In this document: in pieces, positions 12,501 through 33,500 of the stretch
Position numbering within the stretch: position 1 is the stretch's first letter
How the letters are laid out: every line of letters begins with the position of its first letter
Assembly: GCF_902713615.1 (NCBI RefSeq)
Contig: NC_052154.1
Coordinates: 43,753,306-43,817,305 of the forward strand
Source: Scyliorhinus canicula
Lineage: Eukaryota
DNA length: 64,000 nt
Direction of reading: 5' to 3'
The notes under the pieces: generated by a model
Seen by the model: only the letters and a program-made list of their open reading frames with translations
The model's database searches: none
What the model was told of the DNA's origin: nothing
Program-made: the position numbers and the translations under genes

Positions 12501-15500
12501 AGGTTCAATCCTCAACCTGTATTAGATTAGCCTATTTAACTTTTGGGAATGATGGAGTATGGTAGTTAGCTCTGTGCCCATTGGTGAAAAAGGGAAAATA
12601 AAAATGAGCCAGGCTTTCTCGATTTTGATCTGTGACTCCTGCTGTGCAGTATATCGACGGAATGAGGTCCGGTTGCACTTGCAATAACTTTCTGTTTAAA
12701 AAGCCTGCTAATGCTTATTATCTAGACTTGTGCATGAAGAAGTGCACCCATGGGACCACTCTGCAATAGGAAACTGTGCCTTCAAGATAGGAGGGGAGAA
12801 AACAGGCAGAGAAACAGAAAAACTGGACTTTTCAGGAATGATGGCGCAGCTTTCGAGCACCACTTACATCTTCTCATGTGGTGAGTCATGTCGGCCATGT
12901 CAACCGAAGGCCACAAGGCGGGAGGAAAAGGCAAGAGCAAACACTATGTGCTGTTGCATCATTTTGTTGGAAATCGAGGGGGCAGCACGGTGGTGCAGTG
13001 GGTTAGCCCTGCAGCCTCACGCCGCTGAGGTCCCAGGTTCGATCCCGGCTCTGTGTCACTGTCCTTGTGGAGTTTGCACATTCTTCCCGTGTTTACGTGG
13101 GTTTTGCCCCCACAACCCAAAGATGTGCAGGCTAGGTGGATTGGCCACGCTAAATTGCCCCTTAATTGGGAAAAAATGAATTGGGTACTCTAAATTTTTT
13201 TTTAAAATGTTTTTGGAAATCGGGAGCGGGTTGTTCATATGTTAATCAGGGATCATGTGAGATAAAGTGAAGGCAAGGAATAACAAATTCCTTATAAAAA
13301 ACACAACTCCAAAAGACTATAAGACAATCAGACTGTAACCTAACTTTCTATTACATTGAAATCATACCAGATTGTCAATTCTAGCACTTTAGGATCAGCA
13401 TGTTTTTTGACATAAATTGTAACAAAAACTCAGCAAACTTTGAAACAAAACAAAATGAGAATGTCAACTCTTGGAATACATACCCCATACAGAGTTATGA
13501 GTCATTGGACCCGTGTGAATGTCCAGGCATGCAAATCAGCCAAAATATGATATTGCAGGTTGTAAACTCGGATTTTGTCAGAATGTTGATGGAGGAATTT
13601 CTTGACTCCAAATTTCCTTGGGTGGCACTGATCTTGCTAGTTTGCAGGGTGAGCCAAAATGGATCTTATTTGCATTGGGTTGGAACAAGACTATTTTGGC
13701 AACAGTCTCTCCATGTCTGGCAGGTACTTTGGTGCCTGCTTGCTCTTTGAGAAGGGGTTGCCCAGTGCCACTCCCCAGCACCACTGCCAATAGACCTATA
13801 GACAAGGAGGCCAATTTGGTCCACATTCACCTTTATGGAGGGCAGGATGCCTCCACTCTACATACCAGTTGTCACCATTATACCAGTTCACACTGGAGTA
13901 GTAAAGTGGGGACTCCTAGCCTATGGGAAATCTATGGATTTCTCCATCAATGGTTGTAATTTGCTATGCAACATGTTATAACCATTACAAAATGTTGAGG
14001 AAATGGTTTTGACACAGCACACTTCGCAAAGGGTTTCAGATAAATTGATTATGAACAAATGTGAGGGACGATTGTGTCTCTACTTATAGCTGGGTGATAT
14101 AAGTTTATTGTTTTATCTTAGTTTTATTAAAACACAAATAATAAAATGCAGAAGTTAAAATGTTTTAAAAAAAACTTCCAATTAAAGAGCAATTTAGTGT
14201 GGCCAATCCACCTACCTTGCATATCTTTGGGTTGTGGGGTGAGACCCACGCAGACACGGGGTCTCACCCCCATAGGGACAGTGAGCCGGGACCAGGATCG
14301 ACCCTGGGTCCTCGGCACCGTGAGGCAGCAGTGCTAACCACTGTGCCATCGTGCCGCCCAAAAGTTAAAATGTTAACACTTTAGCAAGCATCCAGTTCCT
14401 GCAGATCAATGTGAGGAGCCACTATGGAGATTTCAAAGCAAATTGTACAACCCTGATATTCAGTAATATAGCAAAATACTGCGCAGAAAGGAAACAATTT
14501 ACACGTTTAAAAAAAAACATACCCAAAAACTCGCAATGTTGTGTTGATCTCCAGAGCTTCAGCTATTGAGCGGGCACCTTTAGCGCCAACAGTGTTTGCT
14601 CTTAATCTTGTGAAAACAAAGTGATTTAGTTAAAGCAAGAGAACCAAAAGCATTCCAGTCATCCCAACAGCAGTGCAGCTAAATAATCTTTATTCCTGAA
14701 AACTTGACAAGTATTGTAATTTGCCAGGTTTAATACATACCCCAGTGTTTTCAGACTGCTGTTTGTTTTCAATGCTTCAGCTATTTGGGCTGCTCCTTTC
14801 TCCCTTATGGAGTTGTGTTTCAACCTGTGAAAATTCTGGATATTCAGACACTGTATCCAATGTGTGGACTCAAAGTTAGTGACATCTATATACAAGCACT
14901 CAGTCATCTCAATTATAAATTTTGATTTAATAATAATTTGATTTGAAAATATTCCTGATTAGTTAGCAGCATGCATGGCACATGGGGAGTTACCCACTGC
15001 AGTAAATAAAATGCAGGGCCGGGGTTCTCCCTTACCCGGCGGGGCGGGGGGTCCCGGTATGTTGGAGTGGCGTGAACCACTCCGGCATCGGGCCACCTAA
15101 AGGTGCGGAGTTAGGGGCCAAGCCCTCACATTGAGGGGCTAAGCCCGAGCCAGAGTGGTTCCCACTGCGCCGGCTGGCGTGAACGGCCTTTGGCGCCACG
15201 CCAGCAGGGGCCAAAAGGACTTCGCCGGCCGGCGTAGGTCCATGCATGTGCCGGAGCGTCAGCAGCTCCTGACGTCATACCAGCACATGCACAGGGGAAG
15301 GGGTCTCTTCCGCCTCTGCCATGGTGAAGGTCATGCCGGGGGTGGAAGAAAAAAGAGTGCCCCAACGGCACAGGCCTGCCTGCCGATCGGTGGGCCCCGA
15401 TCGGGAGCCAGGCCACTGTGGGGGCACCCCCCTGGGTCAGATTGCCACCCCCCCCCCCCCCCCCCCCCCCCAGGACCCTGGAGCCCGCCCACGCCACCAA

Positions 15501-18500
15501 TCCCGCCGGTCAGGTAGGTGGTTTAAATCACGCCGGCGGGAGAGGCTTGTCAGTGGCGGGACTTCGGCCCATCGTGGGCCGGAGAATCGCCGCGGGGGGC
15601 CCGAATTCCACCCCAGGTTCTTACAATATAGACTGAGCAGAGAGCTGTTATTTTCATGTGTTAAAGAGAATTAATGTCATACTATGTTATATGTATTACA
15701 CTGCTTGTCAGTAGAACTAGGAATAGAATGCTGTCAGAAAAGTGGCTTGGAAAAGTTAGCACAATAAAATACACACACGATCGATATAGTAATTATTGTA
15801 AATTCTAGCATTTAATTACTCCATCTTTATTAATTTACATATTTTGCACCATTAACTTTAATGAGCCTCCCTCTCCCCCTCTCCCCTCTACACTATGCTA
15901 TTAGCATTCAGTATATAAACCAAATATTCCAAAAAAACTAGAACAGTTAGCAACAGAAAATGATATTAATCATAATTTTTTAACAGGTTGATCGTTCAGT
16001 CACAGTAAGATACAATTTCTACATTTCTAAAATGTATAAAAGTCACGAATCTCTAATCGCATTGTTATGAGATAACAGTTGGAGGAAAGAGCTCATGATG
16101 GACTTCATTACTCTTGGCCTGTGAATTTTAGATCTTAAAAAAAAAATGTTCAACTAATTTTCCATCTTTTCTCAAACTTTTCTGTCTTTAACCAAACCTT
16201 GTAGTTCATCTCTAATTTTGAAAAAAAGGCCATTTTAATGATGTGGCGTACAAAAGTGGAGCAGTTGGAATTTTACCTCAAGATTTCTATTCTACACGTT
16301 TCATTTTTGAGTGCATTGGCAATGATCTCTGCTCCTTCGTCCTCCAGCATGTTTCCCTCTAAACTGTAAGTTTAAAAAAAACATTTTTTTTAGTTCTGCC
16401 TCTGTGAATGCCGAATGTATTTTTGAAGTAATGAAGTATTCATTTGCTCAGCTATAATTATTCAATTTAAGTTGTGCTAGCATATTCTCACATACTGAGC
16501 AGAGTTTCTTGCTGTCACTCATTCACCACTTAACAACATGCATTTATATGGCAGACTTAACATAGAAGAATATTAAAAAGTACTTATCAAAGGAATAACG
16601 GAAAACTTGATGGAGAGAAAAAGGAGGTAGTAGAGGGATGACTAAAGACTGGGTCCTGGAAGTAAGATTTTTTAGGAGGAGAGGTGCTGGATAGGCAAAG
16701 AGATATAAGAACATTAATCAAAAGCATGGGAGCTAAAGGCATTATTGCCAATTATGGGTGAAGGGATGGGGAAACGCTCAAGAATTTAGAGGTAGAAGAA
16801 TAGAGTTTTCCGGCAGAATTGGAGAAAGTTAGAGAAATATTGCTAAAAAGAGGCATGTCAAAGCTTTTTGTCTTGCACTCATCAGGACACTTCACAAGAA
16901 TACAATTGTGAGGGGAAAACACCAATTTACACTGTATGAGAAGCAAATGCACTCTGGTTGAAATCAAATGACAATCTTAAGATTGTCAGTCAGACTTGCA
17001 GTGTAGTGAATTTGTGTGTACTGGAAGCTACATATATTAATTGCAGACAGAAAGAACATGTACACATATTGCGCTTGTTTCAGCTCGACACAAGTGACTG
17101 CCAGTCACTGATTAATTCCTCAGAGCAATGCCTTGACCATTCGGGGTCAAGCTCCCTGGTTTAAATTTCAAACAATGTTTGGCAGTTGTCTCTCAGTCAC
17201 CAGAAACTGGTGCATTCTCCATGGCACTGCCTCTACCAATTAGAATCCACTTGCCAACCAATCAGCAACATTGTCTCAGACATTATAAAATTGTTGTTTT
17301 CCCCTTATAAGGGGCTGGTTTAGCACAATGGGCTAAACAGCTGGCTTGTAATGCAGAAAAATGCCAGCAGCACGGGTTCAATTCCCGTACCAGCCTCCCC
17401 GAACAGGCGCCGGAATGTGGCGACTAGGGGCTTTTCACAGTAACTTCATTGAAGTCTATTCGTGACAATAAGCAATTATTATTATACTGGTATTCCTGCA
17501 AAATGTCCCGTTGAGTGCAAGACATGTCTCTTTTTTCAGCAATACTCAACTTTTGTGCTTCCAAATGACTATTACAGAAGTTTGGAAGGGTAAAACTATG
17601 GGGAGATTTAAACAGAGGATGAAAATGAATTGGAGGCACTGAGATATTCAGGAGTCAATATTGGTCAAGTGAGGAAAGATATAATGGGGAGTGAGGTTAG
17701 GATGGTGAGGGGTGGAAAGCTAGCTAGGAGAGCATTGGAATGGTCAAATCTAAGATGGCATAGGCATGGATGGGCTGAAATTGATGTGGAAGTAGCCAGC
17801 TAATGTCATTTCCCTGGGCATTTTACTGGTCTTTTAGATATAAAGGTGGAGACTGGTTTCAGGTTTTCAATGTCTTTCTATGGTGAGACCTTACCTTGGA
17901 TTTATATTTAAATTATACTTAAAGATTTGTATTTATAAAGTGGCTGTCATGACCTCAGGATGTCCCAAAAGCTTTACAGCCAATGAAATCCTCTTTCAGT
18001 GCAATCAGTGTTGTAATGTAGAAAATCTGACAGCCAATTTATAAATTCATAAAGTTCATAAGATATTGGAGCAGAATTAGGCCATTTGGCCCATCAAATC
18101 TGTTCCGCCATTCTATCATGGCTGATATGTTCCTCCTCTTCTACCTACAATGTTACAGACCAAGAGCTGGATTGCGAAATCAGCCAGAGCATCTCCTCCC
18201 TAGAACACATGACCTAGGAGCAGGAGGAGGCAATTTAGCGTCCCTGCCTAAACACGCTCAACGTGATCATGGCTGACCCCATCCTGGCCTCAATGCCACC
18301 GTCCTGCGCGTTCTCCATAACCCTTCAACCCATTACCAATTAAAAATCTGTCTAACTCCTCGTTAAATTTACTCACTGTCCCTGCATCCACCACACTCTG
18401 GGGTAGCGAATTCCACAGATTCACAATCCTTTGGGAGAAATCGTTTTTCCTCAAATCTGTTTGAAATTTGCTACCTCTTATTCTACGACTATGACCACTC

Positions 18501-21500
18501 ATTTTAGAATACTGAAAGCTCCTACAACAACTGATCATAGTAACTACAATAACTGTCTAAACATTTTAAGCCAAAGGTGCTCATGTGGTCTGCTTGTATT
18601 GGATCATTTGCCACTAATGCTAGGATTAGTCAAAAATTAAACTAATATCTGTGATCAAATATTAATGTTTTCATGTTCAGTGTTTTTGCTGTTTTAATAA
18701 TGTTCAATATAAAATATATGAATTTTAAGTAAAGATTTGAAATATTAGCACAATATAAATGAATCAATTGCCAAACAATTCAATTTGAAAGTCAAAAATT
18801 AATCTTAATATTACTATAACCATGTGTGTTAATAGTATAATTGAAATACAAGGAGTGAGACTAATTTATCTGACTGACAGAATATAGAAGATTCAGGGTG
18901 CGATCTAACCAAAACAAAAAGTCAGAGTCCGTTCTGGGCGGAATTAGCCGGGTCTTTCCCGGCACTACACCTACTATCTAACGGCACTTAGTTGCTATAC
19001 TGGGCCCTGACAGTGCCACCAAGGTACGCTGGCAGTGAAGGGCCGGCTCCTGAAATTACACTGTCAGGGCGCCAGGCTAACAGTGCCATGGTGCCCAGTG
19101 GCCCCAGCAGTGATAGAGTGCCAGGCAGGCCAGAGGACGACCACCTGGGTCTCCCAGGTGACCTCTGATCACCTGGGAGACCCCCCCCAAGAGCTGGTAC
19201 GTCTGGCTCCGATTTGTGGAGACCAGTGGTGAACAGCACTCGGCTGGAGTCTCCTCGGTGAGACCAATAGATGCCGGGTGACCGTTCGATCTGCCGTCAG
19301 TATGGCTAAGTGGGATTTTAAACTCACTTAACCGTGCGAGACTGGGCCCCGTCCATTGTGAGTGGGACTCAGATTGTGAGATCTGGTTAGATCTCGTGAG
19401 GTGTAACAGCCCTCCGGAATCCCAGGGTAGGCCTCTGCTGGGATCTACCTGGCGTGTCCCATTCCGCATGCCCGAAATATATTCACATTAATAAGAGTTT
19501 AATAGATTTATCTTGAAAAGACATGGTGGCTGATCCACCAATATCCCAGAGCATTTCTGATACTTCTAAATCACGTCTAAAAATCATTTCAATACCTCAA
19601 TATCTTGACTCTTGAGAAAACAGACTCCAATCTTTGGAAACCAGAAGCTCCAGCTTTACATCCATCTAGTTCCAACGTTTCAATAGTTTGATGGTAAGAA
19701 AGAAGGTGTGCAATTGCTGTGCAGTCAGTCACATTCAGAGAAATGTAAGAAAAATTTACAACATCACTGGTTTGGGAGGCAACAAGTTGTGTTAAGTTTT
19801 CATTTGCTGCTTCATAGAGACAATGCGAGGCTGTTAGTTTTTGCCTTTTGTGAACTGTATATTTTGTAATATTTTCTGGAGATAGCGTGTCTTCTTTTGG
19901 AACGTCAACTGCAGCAACATTCTTGATAGCATCAAAGACTTCTGTTTCTTTAACTTGATGTTTAGGCACCAACTGCTTCACAAGTTTTCTGTTGCTATGA
20001 GAAACTAGGCCAGCTGTGAACCTCAGCACAATCTCAAATACATTGCTTTTCGAACTGAAAGCTTTATGCACATGATCCACACTGGGTTCGTTAGCAGAGA
20101 TGCAATAAAGTGCTGCAAAAAACTCCTGGTGTGTCAGGTGGAAAAATTGCCAAATGTGGGATTGCATCATTTTCTGGCTCTCTTTAGTGAGAATTTTCTT
20201 CCAGAAGGACTTTTTGTCCTGGGGGTTTTGGGCGATGTTCCTTTCAATGTCTTTTGTTGAGAATATTATTGTTTTATTAATGATCCCATCCCATGCAAGT
20301 TGTGCCAATTTAATTATTTCATTTTTGTCATTATCATCTTCAATGCAGAAGGACTCAAGATCTTCTTCCTCATCACTGTTACAGACCAGTAAACACTTGG
20401 TGAATCTAAGGAACAAATCTGTGATTGTCCTGGGAAAGGAAGAGATCTGAGACCACTTGCCTTTACAGTGAAAGGTTTTGTGGAGGTAAAAACACAGGAT
20501 GTCACAAAATGCAGGAACATAGCAGAGTCCAAACAAGGAATCGATGCTCTTCACTGTTTGAAAGACATGATCAGCAACCTTTATATCCTTGAGGCACTTC
20601 AAAAAGTATGCAGAAATTTCCTTCTTGGAAAATCCTAAAATTTCAGCACATCGATTAAAATACGCTTTGTTATCTAAATCAATTGTGGTTGGGCGGGATG
20701 TAATCAGGACAGTTGCCTCGGGAACAAGGTCTCCCTTTATGATACTTACAATCAAATGGTTAATTTGTTGAGCAATGGATGGGTCGATAATTGAAGGATT
20801 GTTAAACTCAAGAGACAATTTGAATTCATCCAACCCATCAAACAAAAATAGGATCCTGTTGGGATATTTCAATATCTTATTGCACAATGCTCTCAGATGA
20901 GGGTAGCTACATACTATAAGCTCAGTCAGACTGATATTGTCCTTAATTGTGTTTAGCTCCCGAAAACTGAAATATAGCAGTATATAAAATCCAGTATAAA
21001 TCATTCCACAGGCCCAACTATGAGTGAGCTTCTGCATCATTACGCTTTTGCCTATGCCTGCCACGCCTTGCACTAGAGTAACTCGGGGTGGCTTCTCCCC
21101 AGGTGCAGATGGCGAGAGAAGCTGTTTTAAATCTATACGCTCACACGCTGTGTAGTCTCTGTGTTGCAGAAGTTCATGTTCAGTTTTGTTCTTTTCCCGA
21201 ACATTGAGAATAACTAGGCTGGTGAAATGTTCCTGCAGCAAGGGCCTGGAGTTATCAAATACAAAGTATGGTTTTATTCTCTCCATTTGCTCTTGTAATG
21301 TGGATTTATGTGTGGCCACTGCTTCAGAGATTTCTGTAATTACAAGAGAAAGGTAATGAGCTACAGTGGAGCCCCCATTTTCTATCATAAGGAGCAGGGC
21401 TCCTCAGTGAATTACATAATATGACACATACTCCTGCGACACCAGTTTTTGGATTTTAGACAGGTGATAAATTAATACAACAGGCACAAAATTAAACCAA

Positions 21501-24500
21501 GTACAATCCAAATTATAGTAAACAATTTCAATGTTTCTTGGTCTTTGAGGTTCCATAAGACCATAAGACATCGGAGTGGAAGTAAGGCCATTCGGCCCAT
21601 CGAGTCCACTCCGCCATTCAATCATGGCTGATGGGCATTTCAACTCCACCTACCAGCATTCTCCCCGTAGCCCTTAATTTCTCGCGACATCAAGAATTTA
21701 TCTATCTCTGCCTTGAAGCCATTTAGCGTCCCGGCCTCCACTGCACTCCGCGGCAATGAATTCCACAGGCCCACCATTCTCTGGCTGAAGAAATGTCTCC
21801 GCATTTCTGTTCTGAATTTACCCCCTCTAATTCTAAGGCTGTGCCCACGGGTCCTCGTCTCCTCGCCTAACGGAAACAGTTTCTTTGCGTCCACCCTTTC
21901 TAAGCCATGTATTATCTTGTAAGTTTCTATTAGATCTCCCCTTAACCTTCTAAACTCCAATGAATACAATCCCAGGATCCTCAGCCGTTCATCATATGTT
22001 AAGACCCGCCATTCCAGGGATCATCCGTGTGAATCTCCGCTGGACAAGCTCCAGTGCCAGTATGTCCTTCCTGAGATGTGGGGCCCAAAACTGGACACAG
22101 TACTCCAAATAGGGCCTAACTAGAGCCTTATAAAGGCTCAGTAGCACATCGCTGCTTTTATATTCCAACCCTCTTGAGATGAATAAGGTTCATTTCTGTT
22201 GAACCCAGGAAGTTGGTGTTTGTGGTCAGTGAAATGGGACATCTGCAATAAGGTTTTGTCCTACAGCAATAGAGGCTTGTCTGGAGGGCAAATAATTGGA
22301 ACCTAAGCAATGGAGGTTTCGCTGTTTATACCAAGGTATGTGAGACATCTGCTAAAATGCAGTTCATTCTAAGAATTTAAATGTCACTTGTGGAATGTTA
22401 TGAAGGTGCCAGTAGGTTTGTTCAAATTTTCATCTATTCCATTCTACTAAGTAGCCAGTATATTATCAAAATTAGAATCAGTTAGCAGGAGTATTTGATA
22501 GCTTGATTGTCCCATAATATTTTCAAGACCCAACCTGCATTTGCATGATTATCGCGCCTGACTTGGTGATGCGACGAGGCCATTGAATCTCACGAGAGGC
22601 GTGATTCGTGGCACTTGAGACATTTTGTGAGATTCAACTGAACGCCGCGAGATGGTGCGATCTGTTTCTTGCCCTCGCTGGGGGAGATCCAGATATGCAT
22701 ATTTAAATGGGCCTAAATATGTCTGTGCCGTATTATCCCGGTGTCCGGGAACTAACAGCCTCCCCAGCGAGGCCTCGCCAGGCATAATGGCAGCTGGGGG
22801 GGATTTCCCAGGCCATTGGAAATAGGGCAGAGTGGCCCCTGGCTCTCCCTCTGGCACCTGGGCACCTTGGCACTGCCACTCTGGCACTGCAGGGTGCCCA
22901 AGTGACACTGCACGGGCACTACCATGGTGCTAGGGTGGCAGTGCCTGAGTGCCCAGGTGCCAGGGCCAAGGGTCATGTCCTGAGGAGGCCCAGGCCCATG
23001 AAAGATATATGAGGGAGGTTATGAAGTGTCGGGGTAATTGGTTTTTGGAGCAGGCAAGGAGCTGGATTAGGGGTTTGCCCCTTTCCACACTCTGAGCCCT
23101 GGCTTTGTAACTCAGAAAAATAAAAAAAAGAAGTATGAAGGGTGGAGGTCCTGAATGGGGGAGGACCCGAAAGGGCGGTGGGGATGCCTGAAAATGGGGA
23201 TCCCTTAGCAACCCCAAAGAGGGATGTCTTCACTTGGGATGAGGGGGCTAATGGCCATGTGTGCGGGGGTGACATTGTCCGTGGGTGTGGGGGACCCTCA
23301 TGCTCACTTACAGATCGGGGCGCCCTTTCAAAATGGTGGCCCGATATCTGAGGAGATGGTCTGGCTGGCGAGTTGAGCTCCCCAGTCAAACAATTTCCAA
23401 GTGTGGGCTTGACTGGGTCAAACTCCCCAAGGCCCAAGAAAATTACTAAGGGCATGATTGTCCGGCCGTGTTCCGCCAGAATCGGGATGGGACAGCCTAC
23501 AATGGGCGGGATCCAGATTTGCATAGTTAAGCATGCAGTTAGGCAGTTAGTGTGCAGTACATGTCTATGCCAGAACTAACCAGCCCCCAGGATCATCGAG
23601 GCGACCCCAGCCGGGCTCTGTTTAGCACTGGATCTCCCTTTATTTACAAACCATTCCCAAATCTCCCCACCTTCACAAACAAGGATCAGGCGGAATGGTA
23701 CTTGAGGGTGATCCCCAGGAGATTGGAGGCCCCCGGATGGTTAGCCTCTGGGCAGGGTGGCACCCTGGCACTTCTGATGCCACCCAGATGGCACTGCCAG
23801 TGCCAGGCTGGCAGTGACACGATGCCCAGGTGGCATTTCCCCCATGCTGGGTATTGGGGCCGGGGGTGCACTGCAATATATGAGGTGGGTTGTGGGTGGG
23901 CTTGACGACCCACAGGTGAGTTGGGACATTGGAGGAGGAGCGGGGGTGGCAGGGGAGTCGTATCAGGGGATTGGATAGGATTCTTTTAGTTTCTGTTAAA
24001 TCGTGCCCCAAGTGTGGTTGAATAGTGGGGGTGTGGATCTGACCCAAAACATTGTTGGGAAATGCCCCGCCAAACTTGCCCAAAATGACACAGAATTGTT
24101 TTGGTTGAATTCCGACCATTATCTTTGACAAATCACACTTACCTTCAGGGAAATTGGTTATTTGGATGTTTTCATTGATGCCCTCAAATGAAATGGGGGG
24201 TAGGTTTTCATTGAGAAGATCAATAAGTGGTCTGTCTTCTTTGTCAATGTAGGATTCCAGCAATGTTGTTACAAACTTCTTTAAGCCAGGATAAATGTTG
24301 TCAGTGTCTTGCAGCACCTCGAGAAACTCAGCAGATGACTGCTGACCTCTGTGGCTCAGCATGTCGAGAAGAGTTCGCCCTTTATCAACGTCTGATTTAT
24401 CTTTTATTTCATTATGGTCACCTTCGGAGATTATTTTCTTACTCATTAAAAGGTGTAAGAGTGGAAGTATGTTGGGACTGATGTAATTAACCAGTGTCCG

Positions 24501-27500
24501 CCGGCCTTCTTCAATTGCATGGATTGCCCAGTCTGGGCGCTTCATTCGTGGTGGAAAATAGACACTATTGTCACAAGCACCTGTTAAGAATGATATGAAA
24601 GCCTTTAAAATCAAAAATGATCTTCGATCAAACTAAGCTGTCTAACAGAGTTTACATTTAGTAGCTAATAAGATATGCACAAAAATAAATGGCTAAATTT
24701 AACTGCTGTAAAATTTTGAAACAGTTGTGTCTGGCAAGTTTATATCATGGTTTGAAGTATTATTTTCTCTTTTTTATGAGTTAACTAATACATCTTCCAG
24801 GACAGCTTTTTCCCAGTAATCTTACAAGGGTAGTATTATTGCTTATTTTACTGACTTCTGCTTGTCTTTGTTCGAGTGAACACTTTTAGTTCTGACTGAA
24901 GCTAATGCTAAAAGCTAAAATGCTAATCTTTGTGCAGGATGAGGTAGGAATTTCCGTCCGTTTTGAGTGAAGTTCTGATACCTTCAATGCTGAGTAATGT
25001 AGTTAATATGCCAAAAGTTGGTCATGCCCACATGTTAATTTAGGGGCTGGATTCTTCTGCCTGTCCGCCCGCCGCAAGATCACCACGTGCAAGACGCGGA
25101 CATTGACTTCGGGCAGGATTCTTTGGTTTGGGGCCCCGATTTGGGGCTCTCGTGGGATTCACCAGTTGCTCCCTGCTCCTTGCCAGTTGCAACGCAGTGG
25201 CTGAGTCATGCCCTCCAAATTTGGTGGGACTTTAGACCCCAATCCCAAATTTTTGCTCCTTACCTCCAAATTCCCTGAAATTTACCACTGGACAGGAGAA
25301 TTCAATAAAATTTGCTAAATCTTAAATGCTAATACAATATAATGTATAGTCTATAATTTACACAGCGATGTACTGTCAAAGGATCATTCTCATTTTTATC
25401 ATGCCCATCATTTTGGTACAGATTGTAACAAATCTAATTTTCTTTCAATTTTTTCCTGTATTTCCTTATTATAAAATAATAGCAGCTCACCTTTGATTTC
25501 TAAAACAACGACTTTTGAAACGCTCTGCTTTAGAGCATCATGCTGAACTTCAAAAGAATACAGCAGCTTCCTTTTTGTAGCTTCTGCAGTTCGGAAGGTG
25601 AGCTGAGATATTAAACTATATGCTCCACTTCCTTGGTGATATTTCAAAGTCATGGCAATGTCATGATCTCCTTCCGTGAAGTGCAGTATTTTGTCTTGTT
25701 CTTGCTCGCTCTGATAATCTACTCTATCGCCTTCACCTAGTTTGTTAGACAATGAGGTGCTCTTCCATTTACTGATGAGAACTCTCTGGAATTTACCCTC
25801 TTCCTCTCTGTACCAGGAGATATTGATAGCTTTTGGTTTGAACCAAAGAACAGCACAAGCCAGAGAGAGGGGATCCTCCATACGGAAATGGTTTGATTGA
25901 ATGATGTCTGTCACTTTGGGGGCAACTGAAAAACAAACAGGAACAGAATCATCCAGTTACAGGCACGGTTCAGCCCCCAGGACTCAACATTTAGTTCAAC
26001 AACTTTAGACTGTGACCTTTTTCCTCCACCTTAACTTCCTCTTATATATCACAAACATTTTTTGATCCCTTGTAAAAACCCTCTCTCCCCCATCTCCAGC
26101 GGGCCATCTGTCACTTGTTAAGGTTTGCTACATCTTTGTGGCAGTCTCTCCCAGTTCCCACTAATCACTGTTCCACCCCCCCCCCCCCCCCCCCCCCCAA
26201 AGAACAAGAACAATACGCACAGGAACAGGCCCTTTGGGCCTCCAAGCCAGTACCGGTCATGATACCACCCTTGGCCTAAACCCTCAGCACCTCCTAGTGC
26301 CATATCCCTCTATACCCATCCTATCCATGTATTTGTCAAGCTGCCTTTTGAACGCAGTTAATGTATCTGCTTCCACAACCTCCCCTGGCAACTTCTTCCA
26401 GGCACTCACCACTCTCTGTGTAAAACACCTGCCTCGTACATCTCCTCTAAACCTTGCCCCACGGACCTTAAACCTATGCCCCTGGTGAAAGAGTGCCTGC
26501 CCATCCACTCTATCCATGCCCCTCATAATCTTGTAGACCTCTATTAGGTCACCCCTAAACTTCCGTCGTTCTAATGAAAACACTCCGAGTCTATTCAGCC
26601 TCTCCGCATAGCTACACTCCAGACTAGGCAACATCCTGGTAAATCTCTTCTGCACCCTCTCCAAAGTCTTCACATCCAGAATTGTGCGCAATATTCCAAG
26701 TGCAGTCTTATCAAGGTTCTATACAACTGTAGCATGACTTGCCAGTTTTTATACTCGATGCCCTGGCCAATGAAGGCAAGCATTCCGTATACTGCCTTGA
26801 CTACCTTGTCCACGTGTGTTGCCACGTTCAAAGATCTGCGGACCTGCACGCTCAGATCTCTCTGACTTTCTATATTCCCAAGACTTTTGCCATTTTGGGT
26901 ATATTTGCCCTCTATTTTAGACTTACCAAAGTACAACCCAACACATTTTCTCCTCTTAGTTCTCAAGAAGGGACATGCAGACGCAAAACGCCAACTCTGT
27001 TTTCTCTCCCTATGGATGCTGCCAGACCTGCTATTTAGTTCCAGCTTTCTCTGTTTTTCAAATTATGTATTATGTAAGTAATTTTCAGTAAATGAAAATG
27101 CCATAGCAACGTACATTGCTCTGATTTTTTGAGCATTGGACTTGTTTTTTACTGTCGTGGATTCTATTGTGTTTTGAAACATTTAGTGATTAGCACAACA
27201 TACAGTGTTCTGCTGCTCAAGTCCCCACCATTTTAAATATATTTTCATGTTCCACACTCTTTGGAGCAAAGTTAGGTGATGCCCTTCCACTGACCTGATT
27301 GACTGGCAACTGCCAATGCCAATGGAAAAAAAGCTGATTTCTCTCCTGAAATGCCGACACATGGGCTGAAGCACTGAGGGCCAGATTTCAAAGCAGGTTC
27401 AGGAACCGGACAATTGGATAATTTTCTGGTCTGACCTGACGTCTCCGCTATCTCACTACCACGAGCCGTTTTAAAATGTAATTGGGAGCTGCCTGTGGCA

Positions 27501-30500
27501 GGCAAAGCCATACTGAGGCCTGTCCTGTCTCACCTCTAAAATGCAGGCAGGGCATTAGAGGGCTAGCAGTGCTTAATTGAAGGAAGATGGTCCTGCAGCC
27601 AACAGGAAGGCAACACCCACAATTCTGTGCAAGATCACCGCCCAAGCACGTCTCAACTAATGTCTCCCAATTTCAACCCGAAAGCTATGTCCTGAAATGC
27701 ACTAGACCCCTCAGGTTAGTGGGATTCCCTTTTGGAAAATTACAGCTTGTACAGCACTCGGTCAATACCCTGGAATGTTCTACCTTAAGAGAGCACCACC
27801 ACCACCACATGAAATATTGTGGTTCAAGGACACAGGCCACGATTATCTTTTCAGGGCAACTGGAGTGGGGCAATAAATGAAGCCTGGCCAAAGTCACCAA
27901 CGTTTTGAAAACAAGCTGACAAAAGATTAATTATTTACCTTTTATTTTCCTGCTGTAAAAATTAAATGTTGCAACGCACACAACTGCTGTGATGACACAA
28001 GTTAGAAGAAAAGTGAGCAATATTCCTGATCTTGGCTTGGATCCTGTAAAAATGCAAGACCCAAAGATGCGTTATTGATTATTCACTGCTTTTTCACTGT
28101 GCTTGTGACAGAAAACAGAGTTTGCAATTTAGTTGCATAAAGCATCATCACACATTCATAACTGAAAGCAGATTTTACTGATAAATAATGCACCAACTCC
28201 TACTTCATTTATAATTTTTAGTGAAATGGCCAACACATTTGTTGGAAAGTCAAGTGGCCTTACTGTACTCCATTTTAAAAAGTAAAACTTTTGACATTTT
28301 AAACATGTCAGTATTTTGTTACTTCATAAATGGAATTCTTTCAACAAAAATGCAAATCTGAAACTTGTGACTGTTCAGTGACTGCACAGCCATTTGGATT
28401 GTGAAGCCAATATGAAAATAATTATTTATTCTACCCAGTCTCACGCTGCACCCAGGCTATGTTGCACCTGATGCTCCAGGCCTTCATTTAGAAAATAACA
28501 CTTTTCCTTTTCTACCCCAAGGATCGAGGGCTGCCTTGCTGATATTAAGCGCAGGATTCTCCATCCATTCATGCCAGTGGGATTCTCCAGTTCCACTGTA
28601 GTGAATGGAAGATTTGGCTGAGTCCCAAATTCCCCGTCCTCACGAGGATCGGTAGCAGGACGGATTCGCAACAGAGGAATCCTGCCTAAAAATGGGATGT
28701 GGTGTTACTAAAATAAAAGTCACATGTTGACAAGTAGCATTATGACATGACAATGCATTGTGAAAGAATAGCTTTGGGAACAGTTTTAAAAACTTATACA
28801 TCTAGGCTTGCAAAAGATTGGCTTCCTATGGCTTGCGTATAAGATTCAGGGCCAAACCCTGAGATGGATTACCAATAAAGGAGGCGCCAAAGAGAAATGC
28901 TCCAGGTTACATTGATTTGTCACTAAATGCCATGTAGGGTAAGTCATTATAATGCTGACATTCTTCTTTGATAAAGTCCCTCAAATGCACACAAGCTGAA
29001 GGCAGATGTCTGTCTAATAGCATATAAGATATCTGAGGCTTGCAATCACTAATCCTGGAAGGTGTCAAATGGAAGCAACACTCTCACCACTGGGCCCAGT
29101 ATCCAAGATGATTGGCTTGCAGAAAGGCAAACAATTGCTCCCAAACTATGCAATCATGTATGATGTGTGCCAATATTATGGTTAGAAAGAAAATTTCAAT
29201 GTTCTCACATATTTTATTGTCAGTTCTGATGCTCACTTCACCATTGTGAGCAGCATTTGGCGTAAATTAAGTACATAGCATAACTTGCATTTGTCAATCA
29301 TCTGTTGGCAAAATAGTTACAAGCATCTTGAGGGTGAGGATGAAATTGGATCTCTTTGGGATTAGAGTGATTCCAAGATGAAACAAGTGATAGTAGCAAT
29401 TCAGAACAAATTAAATTCTCCGTGACAGACGTGAAATCTAGTATCTGTGGGAAATGGAATCTAAGCACTGAGGGGAGTATTAGTGTCCTCCCGTGCAGCC
29501 TGGCTCACTAATTGACCCCAGATGGGGTAGACAATGGGCTGGATATTTCCCCATTGGTTGTGGAATTGTCTGGAGTCAATGAGTGTATTTTAACTGCAAA
29601 ACCACTTCTATGTTCAGCAGTTTAACAAAAACTTCGCTCTGCCATCCGAAGCCTGCTGGACTTGGGAGAGTGAGGTGTGCTCTAAAGGGGCAATTGCTTA
29701 CATACCATATTGAAATTCTAGGTGCAGTTTAATTCCAAGAGTCTGAAACATGGTGACAGATTTTTGTATCTGCCAACAGGTAAATGATAAATAGGTAAAA
29801 AAAAACTACTTGGTTGAATGATTATGAAGGATAATTATAAAAAGCCTTTTCCTCATAATGGTAAAACTGGTCCCTTGCATATTTTGACACAGGAAAGCAG
29901 AACCCACATCACTCAGATGTAATATTGATACTGCTTTGTTGTCTTGTACATTTCTAATAAATTCATGTGCAAGTTTATCAGTATTTCTAGCCCTGTGAGC
30001 TGTGAAAAACATTCACAAATACAGTGGAGCAAAGAGCAAACTGAATGAAGAAGAAAACCTGGGCCAGAATTAAAATAGCACAAGGTTCATTGCAAAGAAT
30101 AGTGGCGGGATTCACCGTTTCAAAAACTAAGGGCGCGATTCTCCCAAAACGGGAGAAATCGTAAAGCTGCCGTAAAACCCGGGCGGGTTTGACGCCAGCG
30201 CGCCCCTTCCCGACCGGGGACCGATTCTGGTCCCCGGTCGGGGCTAGCAGCCCGACGCCGTAGGCTCCAGCATGACGGGCTTAACGAATATCGTTGAGCC
30301 CGCTTGCCGGAGTTAGCGCCGGCTGACGCGTCATATGACGTCAGCCGCGCATGCGCGGTTTGGAAGACTCCAACCCACGCATGCGCGGATTACGTCATCG
30401 CGTATTTGCGCGAAACCCGCGCATGCGCGGGCCGGGTTGCCCCTCAGCCGCCCCGCGAATGGATACTGCGGGGCGGCGGAAGGAGAAAGAGTGCGCGGGC

Positions 30501-33500
30501 ATCGGGCCCGCGATCGGTGCCCACCGATCGCGGGCCCATGGCACCCTTGGCACGGCCGTGCCAATCGGTGCCATGGTTATGAAAAGCGAGTTTGTGACGC
30601 CGTTTTTACGAACGGCCAGACCAGGTGTGTTTGCCGTTCGTAAAAACGGCGTAAAGGGCTGGGACTTCGGCCCATCGAACAGCTGTGAATCGCTGCCGGC
30701 CGTAAAAAAACGGCGGCAGCGATTCGGGTCGGGAGTTGGGCGGGGGTTGGGGGAGAATAGCGGGAGGGCGGGAAAAATGTCGGGAAGGCCCTCCCGCTAT
30801 TCTCCGACCCGTCGTGGGGGTCGGAGAATTTCACCCTAAGTGTTGACGCTGGGACTGAATCAGTGGTGTTCTATGGCAGCAAAACTGGCACTGTTTCCAG
30901 AGCAATTCATCAACTGTGAATGGGCTAGCACTGGTACCACGTTATTCCAATGAAAAATGGTGTCGGAGTCGCCGGGGTTGAGACTCAAGAGGCTGACAAG
31001 CTGCAGCCGCATATTAGCACTCCACTCTCCACACACATTCATCCCAGCCAATAAGGTGGCACTGGTTGCGCTGGAGCACGCCCATTCCATTGATAGGTCG
31101 GCTGGTTTAGCCTGGGGAAGCACCCATGCAACATGTGGCACTCGGTTCACAGTGCGCAATCAGCGGCATGTGCAACCACATAGCTGCCTTGCAGGCTGCA
31201 GCGATGATATTCCTTGCCCATCCACCCTGACCCCGCGGTCCACCTCCTGGCCACTTCCCCAGTCCTGGCAGATGCCCCTCGTCCAGTGGCACAACTATGA
31301 GCACACTATGGCGCTGTGGGAAACTTTCCGTACCCCCTCTCTCTCCCTCAGCAGCCACGCCGCCTGTTTCCTGATTTTTGAAACTACAAGTGAACCTTGC
31401 CGTCGGTAATTCCTCCTACTGGAGGCGGAGCATCATGAAGGCCCCGGAGAATACCTGGCTAATAATATGCCAACGGCATTTACTGTATATGCTGAGTAGA
31501 ACGCACTGACACCGCTATCGAGGCATCGGAACATGGCATTCTGGTGGCCGCCATCATTTTGGTCTCACGGCCGATTTGCCACCCAATCGTCTGATGTTTA
31601 CATATGTGGGAATCAGATAATGTCCTTTTATTTATAATGATCCATTTGTGTGGCTCATTTACACAAATTCAATCCAACGTTCCTAAATAAAAATAAAACA
31701 TAATGCCTACTACATTATAATCAAAAATGAAATGTTTTTCGCATTTATTTCACATTCTCATTTATTATTACTCACCTTTGATGGTCAAACTAACAACTTT
31801 TTGTAAAGTTGTCATCAAAGCTTCATGACTAACTTGGCAGACATAGGAAGCTCCATCATCTGCCAGGGTGCCTTTGATGATCAGGAATGAAAGCAGATTA
31901 AAGGTTCCATCTTGATTTTGCTGAAGTGATCCCACAACCGCACTTGATGTGACGTCAGCTTGGTTTTCACTACCTTGGGAGCCACGTTTTAACCAAGAGA
32001 GAGAATGGTCTTCTGGATAAAAATGTTTCATCTCACAAATAATTGTTTTGTCTTCCCCGAGTTCGACGTCAATGTTTACGGTGTTTACTGAAACTGTAGG
32101 AGGTGCTACAAAGACATAAGGAATAAGGATATATACTATGTTCCTTTTATTACATGTCACCTTAAAATACAACACGGTCATGTTAACCATGCATAGGAAT
32201 GGGTGCGGACAATTTAACTCCTCAAGCCATTTTTGCCATTTAAGTAGATTAGGATTGATCTGAGACCTAACTCCCTATGCCCACCGTTGCCCCAAATGCC
32301 TTAATATTTCTGACCAACAAAAATTGGGCTGTACTAATAAAAGAAAATGCTGGCTAAACTAAGCAGATCTGGCAGATTCATATGGACTTGAAATGTTAAT
32401 TCTGTGGGTGCGATTCAGCCACCACATTTTGTCTGGTGCAATGGGTAAACCCTGTGAGAGCCCCAAATCGGGCTCCATCTCAGGCCAATTGTTACTCACC
32501 CAACTCACTCACTCCGGCGCGATCTGGATCATGCCCTTGCTAGGCGTGATCGGGCTCAGCACATTTAACTGGGACGCCGCTTTTACCCACGCCTGGGAGT
32601 CAATGACCACAGGGGCGCGATTCTCTGCTGCCCAAGACGTGTCGGAGAATAGCGGGAGGGCCTTCCCGACATTTTTCCCGCTATTCTCCCCCCCCCCCCC
32701 CACGGCCGCCCTACGACACGAATCGCTGCTCGCCGGTTTTTACGGCGAACAGCGATTATCCCCAGGCCGATGGGCCGAGTTCCCAGGCCTTTACGGCCGT
32801 TTTCACGAACGTAATCACACCTGCTCTCACCATTCATGAAAACGGCCGCAAAGTGCCGTCCCGGACAACCATGGCACCGATTGGCACGGCCGCAACACGG
32901 CCGTGCCAAGGGTGGCATGGGCCTGCGATCGGTGGGCACCGATCGCGGGCAGCGGGTCCGATACCCGCGCACTATTTGTTCCTCCGCCGCCCCGCAGGGT
33001 CAGTCTGTGGGGCGGCTGAGGGGAATGACGGCCCGCGCATGCACGGGTTTGACGCATCTGCGTGATGACGTCATCCGCGCATGTGCGGGTTGGAGCCGTC
33101 CAACCCGCACATGCGCGGCTGATGTCATCGTGCACGTCAGCCGCCGTGACGCCTGGCACGCGGGCTTAGCGACGGTCGCTAAGCCCGCGATGCCGTTCTT
33201 CACGGGGCCGCGCTGCTAGCCCCGCCCGGGGGGGGGGGGGGAGAATCAGGTCCCGGGAAGGGGCGCGGAGGCTGCCGTGAAACACGGCCAGTTTCACGGG
33301 AGCCTTTACGACTCGCCGCATTTGCGGAGAATCGCGCCCACTGATTCCTCGACCAGGAGCTATTAAGCACGGGTCTCCACAAACATGGACCAGGCATGAC
33401 AGTACCTCGGGAGATCTTGCGGGCCATTAGAGGCTCCTGGGTGGTCGGGCACAGGGCAAGATGGTACTCTGGTACTCCCCCTGGCAATCTTGGCACTGCC

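What the first reader, a model, noticed from the sequence alone, without database searches (positions are those of the whole stretch)
25491..25925. Ig C1 domain on the cytoplasmic side that has lost its disulfide and gained about 35 residues
This exon follows the TM exon, so it would be cytosolic. It keeps the C1 scaffold (LAC...F.P..I.ISW...GAYSL.S.L...Y.xEVQH..L), but the F-strand Cys is Phe (TTT, one base from TGT). The Trp-to-(D/S)G spacing is 34 residues longer than in the extracellular C1. It starts (V/A-x-P-x-V) and ends (IK + G|GTGAG) like exon 3. Inference: a duplicated C1 exon repurposed in the reducing cytosol as a spacer, scaffold or integrated decoy. Loss of the Cys independently fits the predicted topology. 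A relict NIS sequon suggests extracellular ancestry.
Basis: partly seen in the sequence, partly recalled or inferred. Interest (0 to 1): 0.72.

Follow-up and report, generated by a model that had tools for sequence, protein, structure and literature searches.

The report
Cytosolic Ig domain of membrane NLR
This catshark exon encodes an antibody-constant-type domain placed inside the cell, between the membrane anchor and the CARD-NACHT-LRR part of a membrane-spanning innate immune sensor; it is transcribed, conserved in the 12 sharks and rays found, and belongs to a class of intracellular Ig domains I found described in no paper.

Summary
Window 25491-25925 (minus strand) is a phase 1-1 exon of the Scyliorhinus canicula gene that RefSeq calls "protein NLRC3-like". 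Spliced contigs from four runs in four studies join it to the transmembrane exon upstream and the CARD exon downstream. It encodes a 145-residue C1-set-derived Ig domain. The B-strand Cys and C-strand Trp are kept. The F-strand Cys is Phe in all 12 elasmobranch orthologues (TTT or TTC). About 35 residues are added between strands C and D. AlphaFold2 folds the addition as two extra strands and a disordered acidic loop, and it is as conserved as the core. dN/dS is 0.34-0.56.

The exon is not a recent copy of the gene's own ectodomain C1 exon. It matches the first domain after the membrane span of B7-H6-like genes that carry Ig arrays behind their TM helix. That class already has the insertion and has usually lost the disulfide. 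The whole IgV-IgC1-TM-Ig module aligns collinearly with those genes, so it was probably fused as a block to a CARD-NACHT-LRR gene.

Function (juxtamembrane spacer or adaptor) is inferred, not shown. The "relict NIS sequon" is not conserved. Two earlier notes of this scan described the B7-H6-like family elsewhere on this chromosome.

The parts
25491..25925 (-). The finding: a phase 1-1 exon encoding the 145-residue cytosolic C1-derived Ig domain (called E5 here; residues 277-420 of the RefSeq protein held as P0059)
   Evidence: Splice sites read. Pfam C1-set hit. Spliced contigs. 100% identity to P0059.
25552..25554 (-). Phe codon TTT at the F-strand position where C1 domains have the second disulfide Cys (E5 residue 124)
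   Evidence: Invariant Phe in 12 orthologues. No variant in four runs.
25855..25857 (-). Retained B-strand Cys codon TGT (E5 residue 23), now without a partner
25672..25800 (-). Added segment between strands C and D (E5 residues 42-84). It holds the C' strand with Trp53, a disordered acidic loop and one extra strand.
   Evidence: The PDB profile match leaves out residues 41-84. AlphaFold2 strands are at 47-54 and 78-84, with pLDDT under 50 at 59-72. Q46, V48, L49, K52, W53, T56, Q71, E75, D77 and F82 are invariant or nearly so.
27939..28043 (-). Transmembrane exon (phase 1-1): hydrophobic span followed by SRKIK
   Evidence: Joined to 25925 in four runs.
24143..24580 (-). CARD exon (phase 1-1), directly downstream of E5
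   Evidence: Pfam CARD E 1.2e-10. Splice sites. Joined to 25491 in four runs.
31776..32105 (-). Ectodomain IgC1 exon, with both Cys kept; the comparison exon of the finding
   Evidence: Pfam C1-set E 3.9e-12. Splice sites.
41927..42265 (-). Ectodomain IgV exon (B7-type)
   Evidence: Pfam V-set hit. Splice sites. V and C1 together are nearest to solved B7-H6, E 1e-24.
46773..46824 (-). Leader exon, with ATG at 46824 and a hydrophobic signal sequence
19598..21334 (-). NACHT-helical-domain exon. Its acceptor is phase 1, so it is in frame with both the CARD exon and E5.
   Evidence: Precomputed NACHT Pfam for P0059.
3195..16365 (-). LRR exons and the stop codon. Four were mapped: 16365-16276, 14826-14740, 6593-6507 and 3275-3195. 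The exons encoding residues 1204-1258 were not mapped.
   Evidence: tblastn of P0059 on the window.

Best explanation
The exon encodes the membrane-proximal cytosolic domain of a type I transmembrane NLR. The domain order is signal peptide, B7-type IgV, IgC1, TM helix, this Ig domain, CARD, NACHT, LRR.

The domain is a disulfide-free, C1-set-derived beta sandwich with two extra strands and an acidic disordered loop. It is the counterpart of the first post-TM domain ('D1') of B7-H6-like genes whose TM helix is followed by arrays of C1-type Ig domains.

The most likely history is that an IgV-IgC1-TM-D1 block of such a gene was joined to a CARD-NACHT-LRR gene before sharks and rays diverged. This is easy to do because every exon is phase 1-1.

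Inferred function: the domain starts about five residues after the stop-transfer residues, so it would act as a rigid juxtamembrane spacer and protein-binding platform. It would hold the CARD (or the NACHT, in isoforms that skip the CARD exon) off the inner leaflet. It probably also keeps whatever partner-binding role D1 has in the parent family.

Shown: the exon, its splicing, its conservation, the Cys-to-Phe state, and its class membership. Inferred: the topology, the fusion history and the function.
For: Splicing and gene model:
- TM to E5 and E5 to CARD junctions appear in spliced contigs of four runs from four studies. One X1 contig of 6328 nt carries all three exons contiguously. An X3 contig has 783 nt upstream of the TM exon, which fits IgC1 (330) + IgV (339) + leader (52) + a short UTR.
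- My spliced exons equal RefSeq P0059 residues 131-566 at 100% identity.

Conservation:
- The same architecture is present in 12 elasmobranchs.
- C23, W37, F124, W53 and 27 other columns are invariant.
- The Phe codon is TTT or TTC.
- dN/dS is 0.34-0.56, with bootstrap upper bounds 0.57-0.97.
- The CARD-less isoforms of Narcine and Pristiophorus keep E5 and splice it directly to the NACHT exon.

Fold:
- AlphaFold2 gives pLDDT 82 and pTM 0.77, and all five models agree on a nine-strand sandwich.
- VIA-align gives Z 10-12 to TCR V domains, the B7-H6 IgC domain and kappa CL.

Class membership:
- hhalign against family D1: probability 99.0, E 9e-18, 131 columns. Against the gene's own C1: probability 88.8, E 2.5e-6.
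- One collinear BLASTP HSP covers V-C1-TM-D1: P0059 27-421 against Heterodontus P0025 38-434 (E 4e-42), and against catshark P0083 34-433 (E 1e-41).
- The C'-strand Trp is at least 90% conserved across E5 plus D1.

Topology:
- In 34 family proteins both canonical Cys are kept in 48/50 pre-TM domains, 5/31 first post-TM domains and 91/165 later post-TM domains (Fisher 5e-14 and 8e-9).
- The downstream CARD-NACHT-LRR is nearest to NOD2 and NLRP3. These are cytosolic ATP-dependent proteins (established knowledge).
Against: - There is no protein-level or topology experiment. The signal peptide and TM were judged by hydropathy only.
- The runs are labelled RNA only as a guess. I infer RNA from canonical intron removal and empty introns.
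- The domain tree on 105 core columns puts E5 in the post-TM cluster at only 81% SH-aLRT. AU tests reject neither E5+D1 (p 0.25) nor E5+own C1 (p 0.43).
- E5 scores nearly as well against the second post-TM domain as against D1.
- E5 has the highest dN/dS of the folded domains. The loop alone is near 1 in two of three pairs.
- The Cys counts come from related paralogues and repeats, so the Fisher p-values overstate independence.
- Nothing here tests the proposed spacer/adaptor role.
Confidence: 0.7

Rival explanations
1. One reading: the exon is a tandem duplicate of this gene's own ectodomain C1 exon (exon 3). After landing behind the TM exon it independently lost the Cys and gained about 35 residues.
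For: - The two exons share their ends (x-P-x-V start, IK+G|gtgag end) and their phase.
- They are 25% identical.
- The AU test does not reject E5 + own C1 as a clade (p 0.43).
Against: - hhalign score is 40 against the gene's own C1, versus 103 for family D1 and 88 for family D2.
- The insertion, the C'-strand Trp and the frequent loss of the F-strand Cys are already present in D1 of B7-H6-like genes from sharks, bichir, lungfish and amphibians.
- The whole V-C1-TM-D1 block is collinear with those genes.
- The shared exon ends are generic for Ig exons.
Confidence: 0.08
2. Integrated decoy or bait: the domain (or the whole V-C1-TM-D1 block) mimics B7-H6-like receptors that a pathogen targets. 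Interference with the mimic would be read out by the attached NLR, as in plant NLR-ID proteins.
For: - The block is a diverged copy (26% identity) of a co-existing receptor family encoded in the same genome.
- E5 evolves faster than the NACHT domain.
- Nine of the 10 listed exonic differences in the TM, E5 and CARD exons between runs are non-synonymous.
Against: - No pathogen factor or target relationship is known.
- The 26% identity and the one-to-one orthology across the 12 elasmobranchs indicate an old, stable gene rather than a bait tracking its model.
- The counts of differences are tiny.
- No animal NLR-ID precedent is known to me.
Confidence: 0.12
3. Passive leftover: the domain came along with the TM exon at the fusion and now serves only as an inert linker with no specific interaction. 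Its conservation would reflect folding constraints alone.
For: - It has the highest dN/dS of the folded domains, 0.34-0.56.
- One loop is poorly predicted and fast-evolving.
- The homodimer prediction gave no signal, which is not evidence either way.
Against: - 31 columns are invariant over the whole elasmobranch crown. They include surface-loop residues Q71, E75 and D77 inside the disordered loop, and the C'-strand residues.
- The exon is retained in every isoform retrieved while the CARD exon is skipped in two species.
- An inert linker would be expected to shrink or vary in length, yet the length is 141-146 residues in all 12 species.
Confidence: 0.08
4. Alternative topology or isoform: the domain is really extracellular or lumenal, for example in transcripts that skip the phase 1-1 TM exon. 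The Cys loss would then be unrelated to the compartment.
For: - All exons are phase 1-1, so skipping the TM exon would stay in frame.
- Later post-TM domains of the parent family keep both Cys in 55% of cases.
Against: - Every listed contig that reaches the E5 acceptor joins it to the TM exon, in four runs (26 further joints were not shown).
- All RefSeq models of the 12 species contain the TM segment.
- A CARD-NACHT-LRR in the secretory pathway would lack its cytosolic partners (established knowledge).
- Retention of the Cys pair drops sharply exactly at the TM.
Confidence: 0.02

Closest known systems
First post-TM Ig domain ('D1') of B7-H6-like proteins annotated 'uncharacterized' (e.g. S. 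canicula LOC119971842 = P0083; Heterodontus francisci XP_067902345 = P0025; also Pristiophorus, Erpetoichthys, Protopterus and amphibians)
   Same: - Position directly after the TM helix and basic stop-transfer residues.
- Start motif x-P-P/K-V-S/T-D/E-I and a length of about 140 residues.
- C' strand with a nearly invariant Trp.
- F-strand Cys usually replaced by a hydrophobic residue.
- hhalign probability 99%, and a collinear V-C1-TM-D1 alignment.
   Different: - In those genes D1 is followed by more Ig domains and no known signalling domain. Here it is followed by CARD-NACHT-LRR.
- E5 keeps the C-strand Trp, which D1 often loses (14/34), and it always has Phe.
- Sequence identity is only 18-24%.
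Canonical Ig C1-set domains (Pfam PF07654; e.g. Ig kappa CL, IgNAR C domains, B7-H6 IgC)
   Same: - Sequence signatures L-x-C...W and Y-x-x-x-V-x-H.
- Pfam hit above the cut-off.
- 20-24% identity to CL in structural alignment, Z 10-11.6.
   Different: - No B-F disulfide.
- About 35 extra residues forming two more strands and a loop, so V domains align slightly more residues (Z about 12).
- Cytosolic location rather than extracellular.
Sea cucumber AjNLRC4 / AjNLR-new (Ig + TM + NACHT proteins; PMC8699970, PMC13133943)
   Same: Membrane-spanning NACHT proteins that combine Ig domains with a TM segment. AjNLR-new is reported to have an intracellular Ig domain that binds cytoskeletal partners.
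   Different: - The authors describe them as lacking CARD and LRR (abstract), and as having an N-terminal Ig domain between two TM segments with an extracellular NACHT in AjNLR-new.
- No homology to the sea cucumber proteins was tested here.
- Here there is one TM, a B7-type ectodomain and a complete CARD-NACHT-LRR on the cytosolic side.
Butyrophilins (B7-family ectodomain, TM, intracellular B30.2 sensor domain)
   Same: A B7-type IgV-IgC ectodomain is coupled through one TM helix and a juxtamembrane element to an intracellular innate-immune sensing domain (my knowledge of the family). The ectodomain here is nearest to B7-H6 and CD276.
   Different: The intracellular part is an Ig domain plus CARD-NACHT-LRR, not a coiled coil plus B30.2. 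No B30.2 was found by Pfam in the orthologues.
NOD1/NOD2-type CARD-NACHT-LRR receptors
   Same: The downstream part has CARD, NACHT and LRR. It is nearest to solved NOD2 (E 8.5e-60) and NLRP3. NOD1/2 must be recruited to membranes to signal (my knowledge: by S-palmitoylation).
   Different: Here membrane attachment is hard-wired by a TM helix, with an Ig domain inserted before the CARD.
Cytosolic I-set Ig domains of titin, MyBP-C, palladin
   Same: Ig beta sandwiches that fold without a disulfide in the cytosol and serve as spacers and binding modules (my knowledge).
   Different: These are I-set domains of cytoskeletal proteins. E5 is C1-set by sequence (I-set is not among its Pfam hits) and belongs to an immune-receptor lineage.

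Membership tests
Ig C1-set domain (PF07654) | Profile match above Pfam's gathering score | tested here: met
   27.5 bits against a cut-off of 21 (E 4.2e-6), but the match covers residues 15-42 only. The orthologue profile also matches CL/CH over residues 85-140.
Ig C1-set domain (PF07654) | Intradomain disulfide between the B-strand and F-strand Cys | tested here: not met
   The F-strand Cys is Phe in 12/12 orthologues. The B-strand Cys is kept.
Ig C1-set domain (PF07654) | Conserved C-strand Trp packing on the core | tested here: met
   W37 is invariant.
Ig C1-set domain (PF07654) | Seven-strand (ABED/CFG) sandwich without C'/C'' strands | tested here: not met
   The AlphaFold2 models have two additional strands (47-54 and 78-84) between C and D. 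The top structural matches are V domains, by a small margin. This rests on a model, not on a solved structure.
Post-TM 'D1' domain class of B7-H6-like genes (class defined here; I found no published definition) | Lies immediately after the single TM helix of an IgV-IgC1-TM protein | tested here: met
   Five residues separate the hydrophobic span from the A strand. The same arrangement is seen in 11 family proteins.
Post-TM 'D1' domain class of B7-H6-like genes (class defined here; I found no published definition) | Full-length profile similarity including the inserted C-D segment and the C'-strand Trp | tested here: met
   hhalign probability 99.0, E 9e-18, 131 of 146 columns. W53 is at least 90% conserved in E5 + D1.
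Post-TM 'D1' domain class of B7-H6-like genes (class defined here; I found no published definition) | Monophyly with D1 domains in a domain tree | tested here: inconclusive
   E5 falls in the post-TM cluster (SH-aLRT 81). The AU test neither supports nor rejects E5+D1 (p 0.25) or E5+own C1 (p 0.43).
NLR (NACHT-LRR) receptor, CARD subtype (for the gene that holds the exon) | CARD, NACHT with Walker A/B motifs, and C-terminal LRRs in one polypeptide | tested here: met
   CARD E 1.2e-10 on the window. A NACHT ORF with GIGKS and LFLFDGLDE motifs. Precomputed Pfam NACHT, CARD and LRR_6 for P0059. NOD2 is the nearest solved chain.
Type I membrane protein | Cleavable signal peptide, one TM helix, C-terminus in the cytosol | not testable with these tools
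   The hydrophobic leader, the single internal hydrophobic span and the drop in Cys-pair retention at the TM all fit. No topology predictor or experiment was available.

The most novel reading that the evidence does not exclude
Jawed vertebrates other than mammals possess an unrecognised class of intracellular, C1-set-derived Ig domains that form the tails of B7-H6-like receptors. In elasmobranchs one IgV-IgC1-TM-D1 block was fused to a CARD-NACHT-LRR. This would create a true transmembrane NLR in which a B7-type ectodomain and a cytosolic LRR sensor are wired to the same CARD through this Ig domain. Extracellular engagement and intracellular sensing could then converge on one signalling platform at the membrane.
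Probability: 0.45. Interest if true: 0.85.

Novelty: new variant of a known kind. Interest (0 to 1): 0.66.

Why it matters
C1-set Ig domains are the hallmark extracellular modules of adaptive immunity (Ig, TCR, MHC, B7 family). They normally depend on a disulfide formed in the secretory pathway.

Here one sits, by every available sequence criterion, in the cytosol. It has been stably disulfide-free for the whole history of sharks and rays, and it lies directly in front of a CARD-NACHT-LRR.

That gives three things:
- A natural example of how a C1 fold is re-engineered to work without its disulfide: Cys to Phe, an added C' strand and a new Trp.
- A clear case of exon shuffling that links the B7 family to the NLR family.
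- A vertebrate transmembrane NLR. Vertebrate NLRs are textbook cytosolic sensors.

The gene is in RefSeq only as "NLRC3-like" or "NOD1-like". I found no paper describing the architecture or the domain class.

Tried and rejected
- Homodimer prediction of the domain (two copies): score 0.01, verdict 'no answer'. This is no evidence for or against pairing (six earlier attempts found the machine busy).
- Domain phylogeny with AU tests: too few columns to decide between E5+D1 and E5+own C1. I relied on profile-profile scores and collinearity instead.
- dN/dS with more species: DNA was served only for Pristis (L001) and Rhincodon (L002). Carcharodon, Heterodontus, Chiloscyllium, Mobula and Hemitrygon files were too large, and Heptranchias was not on record. 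Only three pairwise Nei-Gojobori estimates exist, so no codon-model test was run.
- NIS sequon as a relic of extracellular life: rejected, because it is present in 2 of 12 species. Conserved sequons also occur throughout the cytosolic NACHT-LRR, so sequons carry no information here.
- Literature: seven full-text searches and five papers read found no description of a vertebrate Ig-TM-NLR or of cytosolic C1-type domains. The whale shark NLR survey does not mention it. UrIg/UrIg2 have their TM after the C1 array, which is a different architecture. Two B7-H6 evolution papers (PMC3709836, PMC4594805) are not held and could not be checked.
- Reading the exon as a sequencing error, private variant or skipped pseudo-exon: rejected.
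Full report
**What is at the coordinates.** On the minus strand, 25925-25491 is a 435-nt exon. It is bounded by a good acceptor (tttgtttttcag|) and donor (|gtgagc), with phase 1 at both ends. It encodes (V)APKVTDIIQSNHFRMEDPLSLACAVLWFKPKAINISWYREEEGKFQRVLISKW...GAYSLISQLTFRTAEATKRKLLYSFEVQHDALKQSVSKVVVLEIK(G). Pfam recognises C1-set above its cut-off, but only over the A-B-C part. A profile of 12 orthologues matches Ig kappa CL and CH domains in two blocks, residues 13-40 and 85-140, leaving out roughly residues 41-84.

The Phe at the F-strand Cys position is codon TTT at 25554-25552. The B-strand Cys (TGT, 25857-25855) and the C-strand Trp are kept. All sequence statements of the finding are correct.

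**The gene.** Upstream on the same strand lie four exons:
- a leader exon (ATG at 46824);
- a B7-type IgV exon (42265-41927);
- an IgC1 exon (32105-31776);
- a TM exon (28043-27939) encoding a hydrophobic span followed by SRKIK.

Downstream lie a CARD exon (24580-24143, Pfam E 1.2e-10), a large NACHT exon (acceptor at 21334) and LRR exons ending at 3195. Every boundary examined is phase 1.

My spliced IgC1-TM-E5-CARD translation is 100% identical to residues 131-566 of RefSeq "protein NLRC3-like [Scyliorhinus canicula]" (P0059, 1314 aa). The window is therefore small-spotted catshark, and the annotation pipeline reached the same exon chain. The ectodomain is nearest to solved B7-H6 (E 1e-24) and CD276. 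The cytosolic part is nearest to NOD2 (E 8.5e-60) and NLRP3.

**Is the exon used, and after the TM exon?** I laid contigs of four runs from four studies (two organism labels) on 22400-28399.
- All four show the joints 27939|25925 and 25491|24580, with GT..AG ends on the gene strand.
- One 6328-nt contig (X1) carries the TM, E5 and CARD exons contiguously.
- One X3 contig has 783 nt upstream of the TM exon, which fits IgC1 + IgV + leader + a short 5' UTR.
- In X1-X3 the non-repeat intron bins have zero depth, so these are RNA-derived contigs even though the run type is only a guess.
- No run shows any difference at the Phe codon. The second organism label differs in E5 at R14H, M15L, K54N and one synonymous site.

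**Conservation.** One-to-one counterparts with the same architecture exist in 12 elasmobranchs:
- four batoids: Narcine, Pristis, Hemitrygon, Mobula;
- eight sharks: Pristiophorus, Heterodontus, Carcharodon, Heptranchias, Scyliorhinus, Chiloscyllium, Mustelus, Rhincodon.

E5 is 50-79% identical among them and 141-146 residues long. Thirty-one columns are invariant, including C23, W37, F124 and W53. Several lie inside the "insertion" (L49, K52, W53, Q71). Phe is TTT in catshark and whale shark and TTC in sawfish. The residue has therefore been maintained through codon turnover.

Pairwise Nei-Gojobori dN/dS for E5 is 0.34-0.56, with bootstrap upper bounds 0.57-0.97. For comparison:

| Segment | dN/dS |
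|---|---|
| IgV | 0.19-0.24 |
| IgC1 | 0.24-0.29 |
| E5 | 0.34-0.56 |
| CARD | 0.38-0.40 |
| NACHT | 0.10-0.16 |
| TM exon | 0.40-0.76 |

So the exon is under purifying selection, but it is the least constrained folded domain. Its disordered loop evolves fastest. Two species have RefSeq isoforms that skip the CARD exon and splice E5 straight to the NACHT exon. None of the retrieved isoforms lacks E5.

**Fold.** With the 12 orthologues, AlphaFold2 gives pLDDT 71. With 11 homologous domains added it gives pLDDT 82 and pTM 0.77, and all five models agree. The model is a beta sandwich with these elements:
- strands B (20-28), C (33-41) and C' (47-54);
- a disordered acidic loop (59-72);
- a further strand (78-84);
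- strands D (87-96), E (101-110), F (120-128) and G (135-141).

The added residues therefore build a V-like extra hairpin on a C1 sequence scaffold. Structural matches are TCR V domains (Z about 12), the B7-H6 IgC domain (Z 11.6) and kappa CL/IgNAR C domains (Z 10.3-10.6, up to 24% identity).

**Where the domain comes from.** A scan of the whole protein library with E5 found, after the orthologue cluster, about 50 proteins. Those whose names I looked up (10 proteins) are all annotated "uncharacterized". They come from sharks, bichir, lungfish and amphibians.

Most share one architecture: signal peptide, IgV, IgC1, a TM helix at residues 230-330, then several C1-type domains. In 11 of them the E5 profile aligns end to end, about 140 residues, with the domain directly after the TM. 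These "D1" domains share several features with E5:
- the start motif;
- the long C-D segment;
- a nearly invariant Trp in the C' strand;
- a hydrophobic residue instead of the F-strand Cys in 8 of 11.

Profile-profile comparison gives the following:

| E5 compared with | Score | E-value | Columns |
|---|---|---|---|
| Family D1 | 103 | 9e-18 | 131 |
| Family second post-TM domain | 88 | 4.6e-15 | 122 |
| The NLR's own ectodomain C1 | 40 | 2.5e-6 | 92 |

A single BLASTP HSP aligns P0059 27-421 with Heterodontus P0025 38-434 (E 4e-42) and with catshark P0083 34-433 (E 1e-41). It runs collinearly through IgV, IgC1, TM and D1 and ends at the same "...IKG/VEG" exon end. P0025 has "uncharacterized" orthologues throughout elasmobranchs.

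I conclude that E5 is the D1 of a B7-H6-like gene and arrived with its IgV-IgC1-TM neighbours. The Cys loss and the insertion are class features, not innovations of this exon.

The caveat is the tree. A domain tree on 105 core columns places E5 in the post-TM cluster at only 81% SH-aLRT. AU tests reject neither grouping.

**Topology argument.** No experiment is available. Three lines agree.
1. The leader is a typical hydrophobic signal sequence. There is a single internal hydrophobic span, followed by basic residues.
2. What follows E5 is a CARD-NACHT-LRR, whose known relatives work in the cytosol.
3. In 34 family proteins both canonical Cys are kept in 48/50 domains before the TM, 5/31 first domains after it and 91/165 later ones (Fisher 5e-14 and 8e-9).

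So selection for the disulfide relaxes exactly at the membrane. The domains counted are related to each other, which means the p-values are optimistic.

**Mechanism, as far as it can be argued.**
- Shown: the exon is an expressed, conserved, disulfide-free Ig domain that begins about five residues after the stop-transfer residues and is followed by a roughly 20-residue linker and the CARD.
- Inferred: it acts as a rigid membrane-proximal spacer and binding platform. It would hold the CARD (or the NACHT, in CARD-less isoforms) away from the inner leaflet so that NACHT oligomerisation can occur. It may also retain the ancestral partner of D1, because the C' strand and parts of the acidic loop are conserved between sharks and rays.
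- Rivals that cannot be excluded: a decoy/bait role and a passive-linker role.
- A homodimer prediction gave no verdict.

**Known or new.** The gene is in RefSeq under generic NLR names. Full-text searches found no description of a vertebrate Ig-TM-NLR or of cytosolic C1-type domains. The nearest published analogues are sea cucumber Ig-TM-NACHT proteins, one reported with an intracellular Ig domain that binds cytoskeletal proteins. Their architecture differs. UrIg/UrIg2 carry their TM after the C1 array.

Two earlier notes of this scan describe B7-H6-like genes with intracellular Ig arrays about 115 Mb away in this genome, and one note describes this whole gene as a transmembrane NLR. I reached the family independently through the protein search, and I treat those notes as agreement, not as evidence.

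**Verdict.** The domain is a new variant of the Ig C1 kind, in an unusual receptor.

Noticed in passing
window 24143-24580 (CARD exon); P0001 and P0063: In Narcine bancroftii (isoform X4) and Pristiophorus japonicus (isoform X2) the CARD exon is skipped and E5 is spliced in frame to the NACHT exon (...LEIK|EISEAVA...). The CARD is therefore a cassette exon, while the Ig domain is kept in every isoform retrieved.
   Followed up: partly
P0061 (Mustelus asterias) residues about 277-310: The Mustelus model has an extra partial copy of the first 30 or so residues of E5 (VAPKVTDIVKSNHLHMDDPLSLVCAV...) in front of the complete domain. This is either a partial exon duplication or a gene-model artefact.
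   Followed up: no
window 24208, 24232, 24296, 24320, 24395, 25762, 25881, 25883, 27983: Nine of the 10 listed exonic differences in the TM, E5 and CARD exons between runs are non-synonymous (e.g. CARD E124G, R116K, I95V, E87K, S62P; E5 R14H, M15L, K54N; TM V20A). This hints at fast protein evolution or balanced variation, but the counts are too small to test.
   Followed up: partly
window 25708-25749 (E5 residues 59-72 and flanks): The disordered loop carries a conserved acidic/Gln motif (Y/F-Q-S/T/N-E-Q-E-Q-D). Its S/T-E-Q-E core resembles, from memory, the major TRAF2-binding consensus (P/S/A/T)-x-(Q/E)-E. It is not conserved in Chiloscyllium or Rhincodon and was not tested.
   Followed up: no
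run X1, record 2 (6328 nt), laid on window 24143-28045: This contig extends 2243 nt beyond the TM exon on the 5' side of the gene. The leader, IgV and IgC1 exons account for only about 721 nt. The rest could be a long 5' UTR, a retained intron or an assembly join, and it lay outside the 6-kb stretch I could lay.
   Followed up: no
family proteins P0002-P0050: Later post-TM Ig domains of the B7-H6-like family still keep both canonical Cys in 55% of cases and the C-strand Trp in 177/179. This is odd for domains predicted to be cytosolic. It could reflect packing constraints, or isoforms that skip the phase 1-1 TM exon.
   Followed up: partly
window 26284-26966, 21640-22168 and 43210-45391 (minus strand); 34973-36563: The introns hold LINE-type reverse-transcriptase fragments, which give very high RNA-contig depth at 26200-27200. 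There is also a retrotransposon gag-pol ORF (448 aa) and a long tandem-repeat tract that reads as repetitive ORFs.
   Followed up: no
L001 1-5482 (Pristis pectinata locus): The upstream neighbour of the sawfish orthologue is an RNase P/MRP p29 (POP4-like) gene. Synteny with the catshark window was not examined.
   Followed up: no
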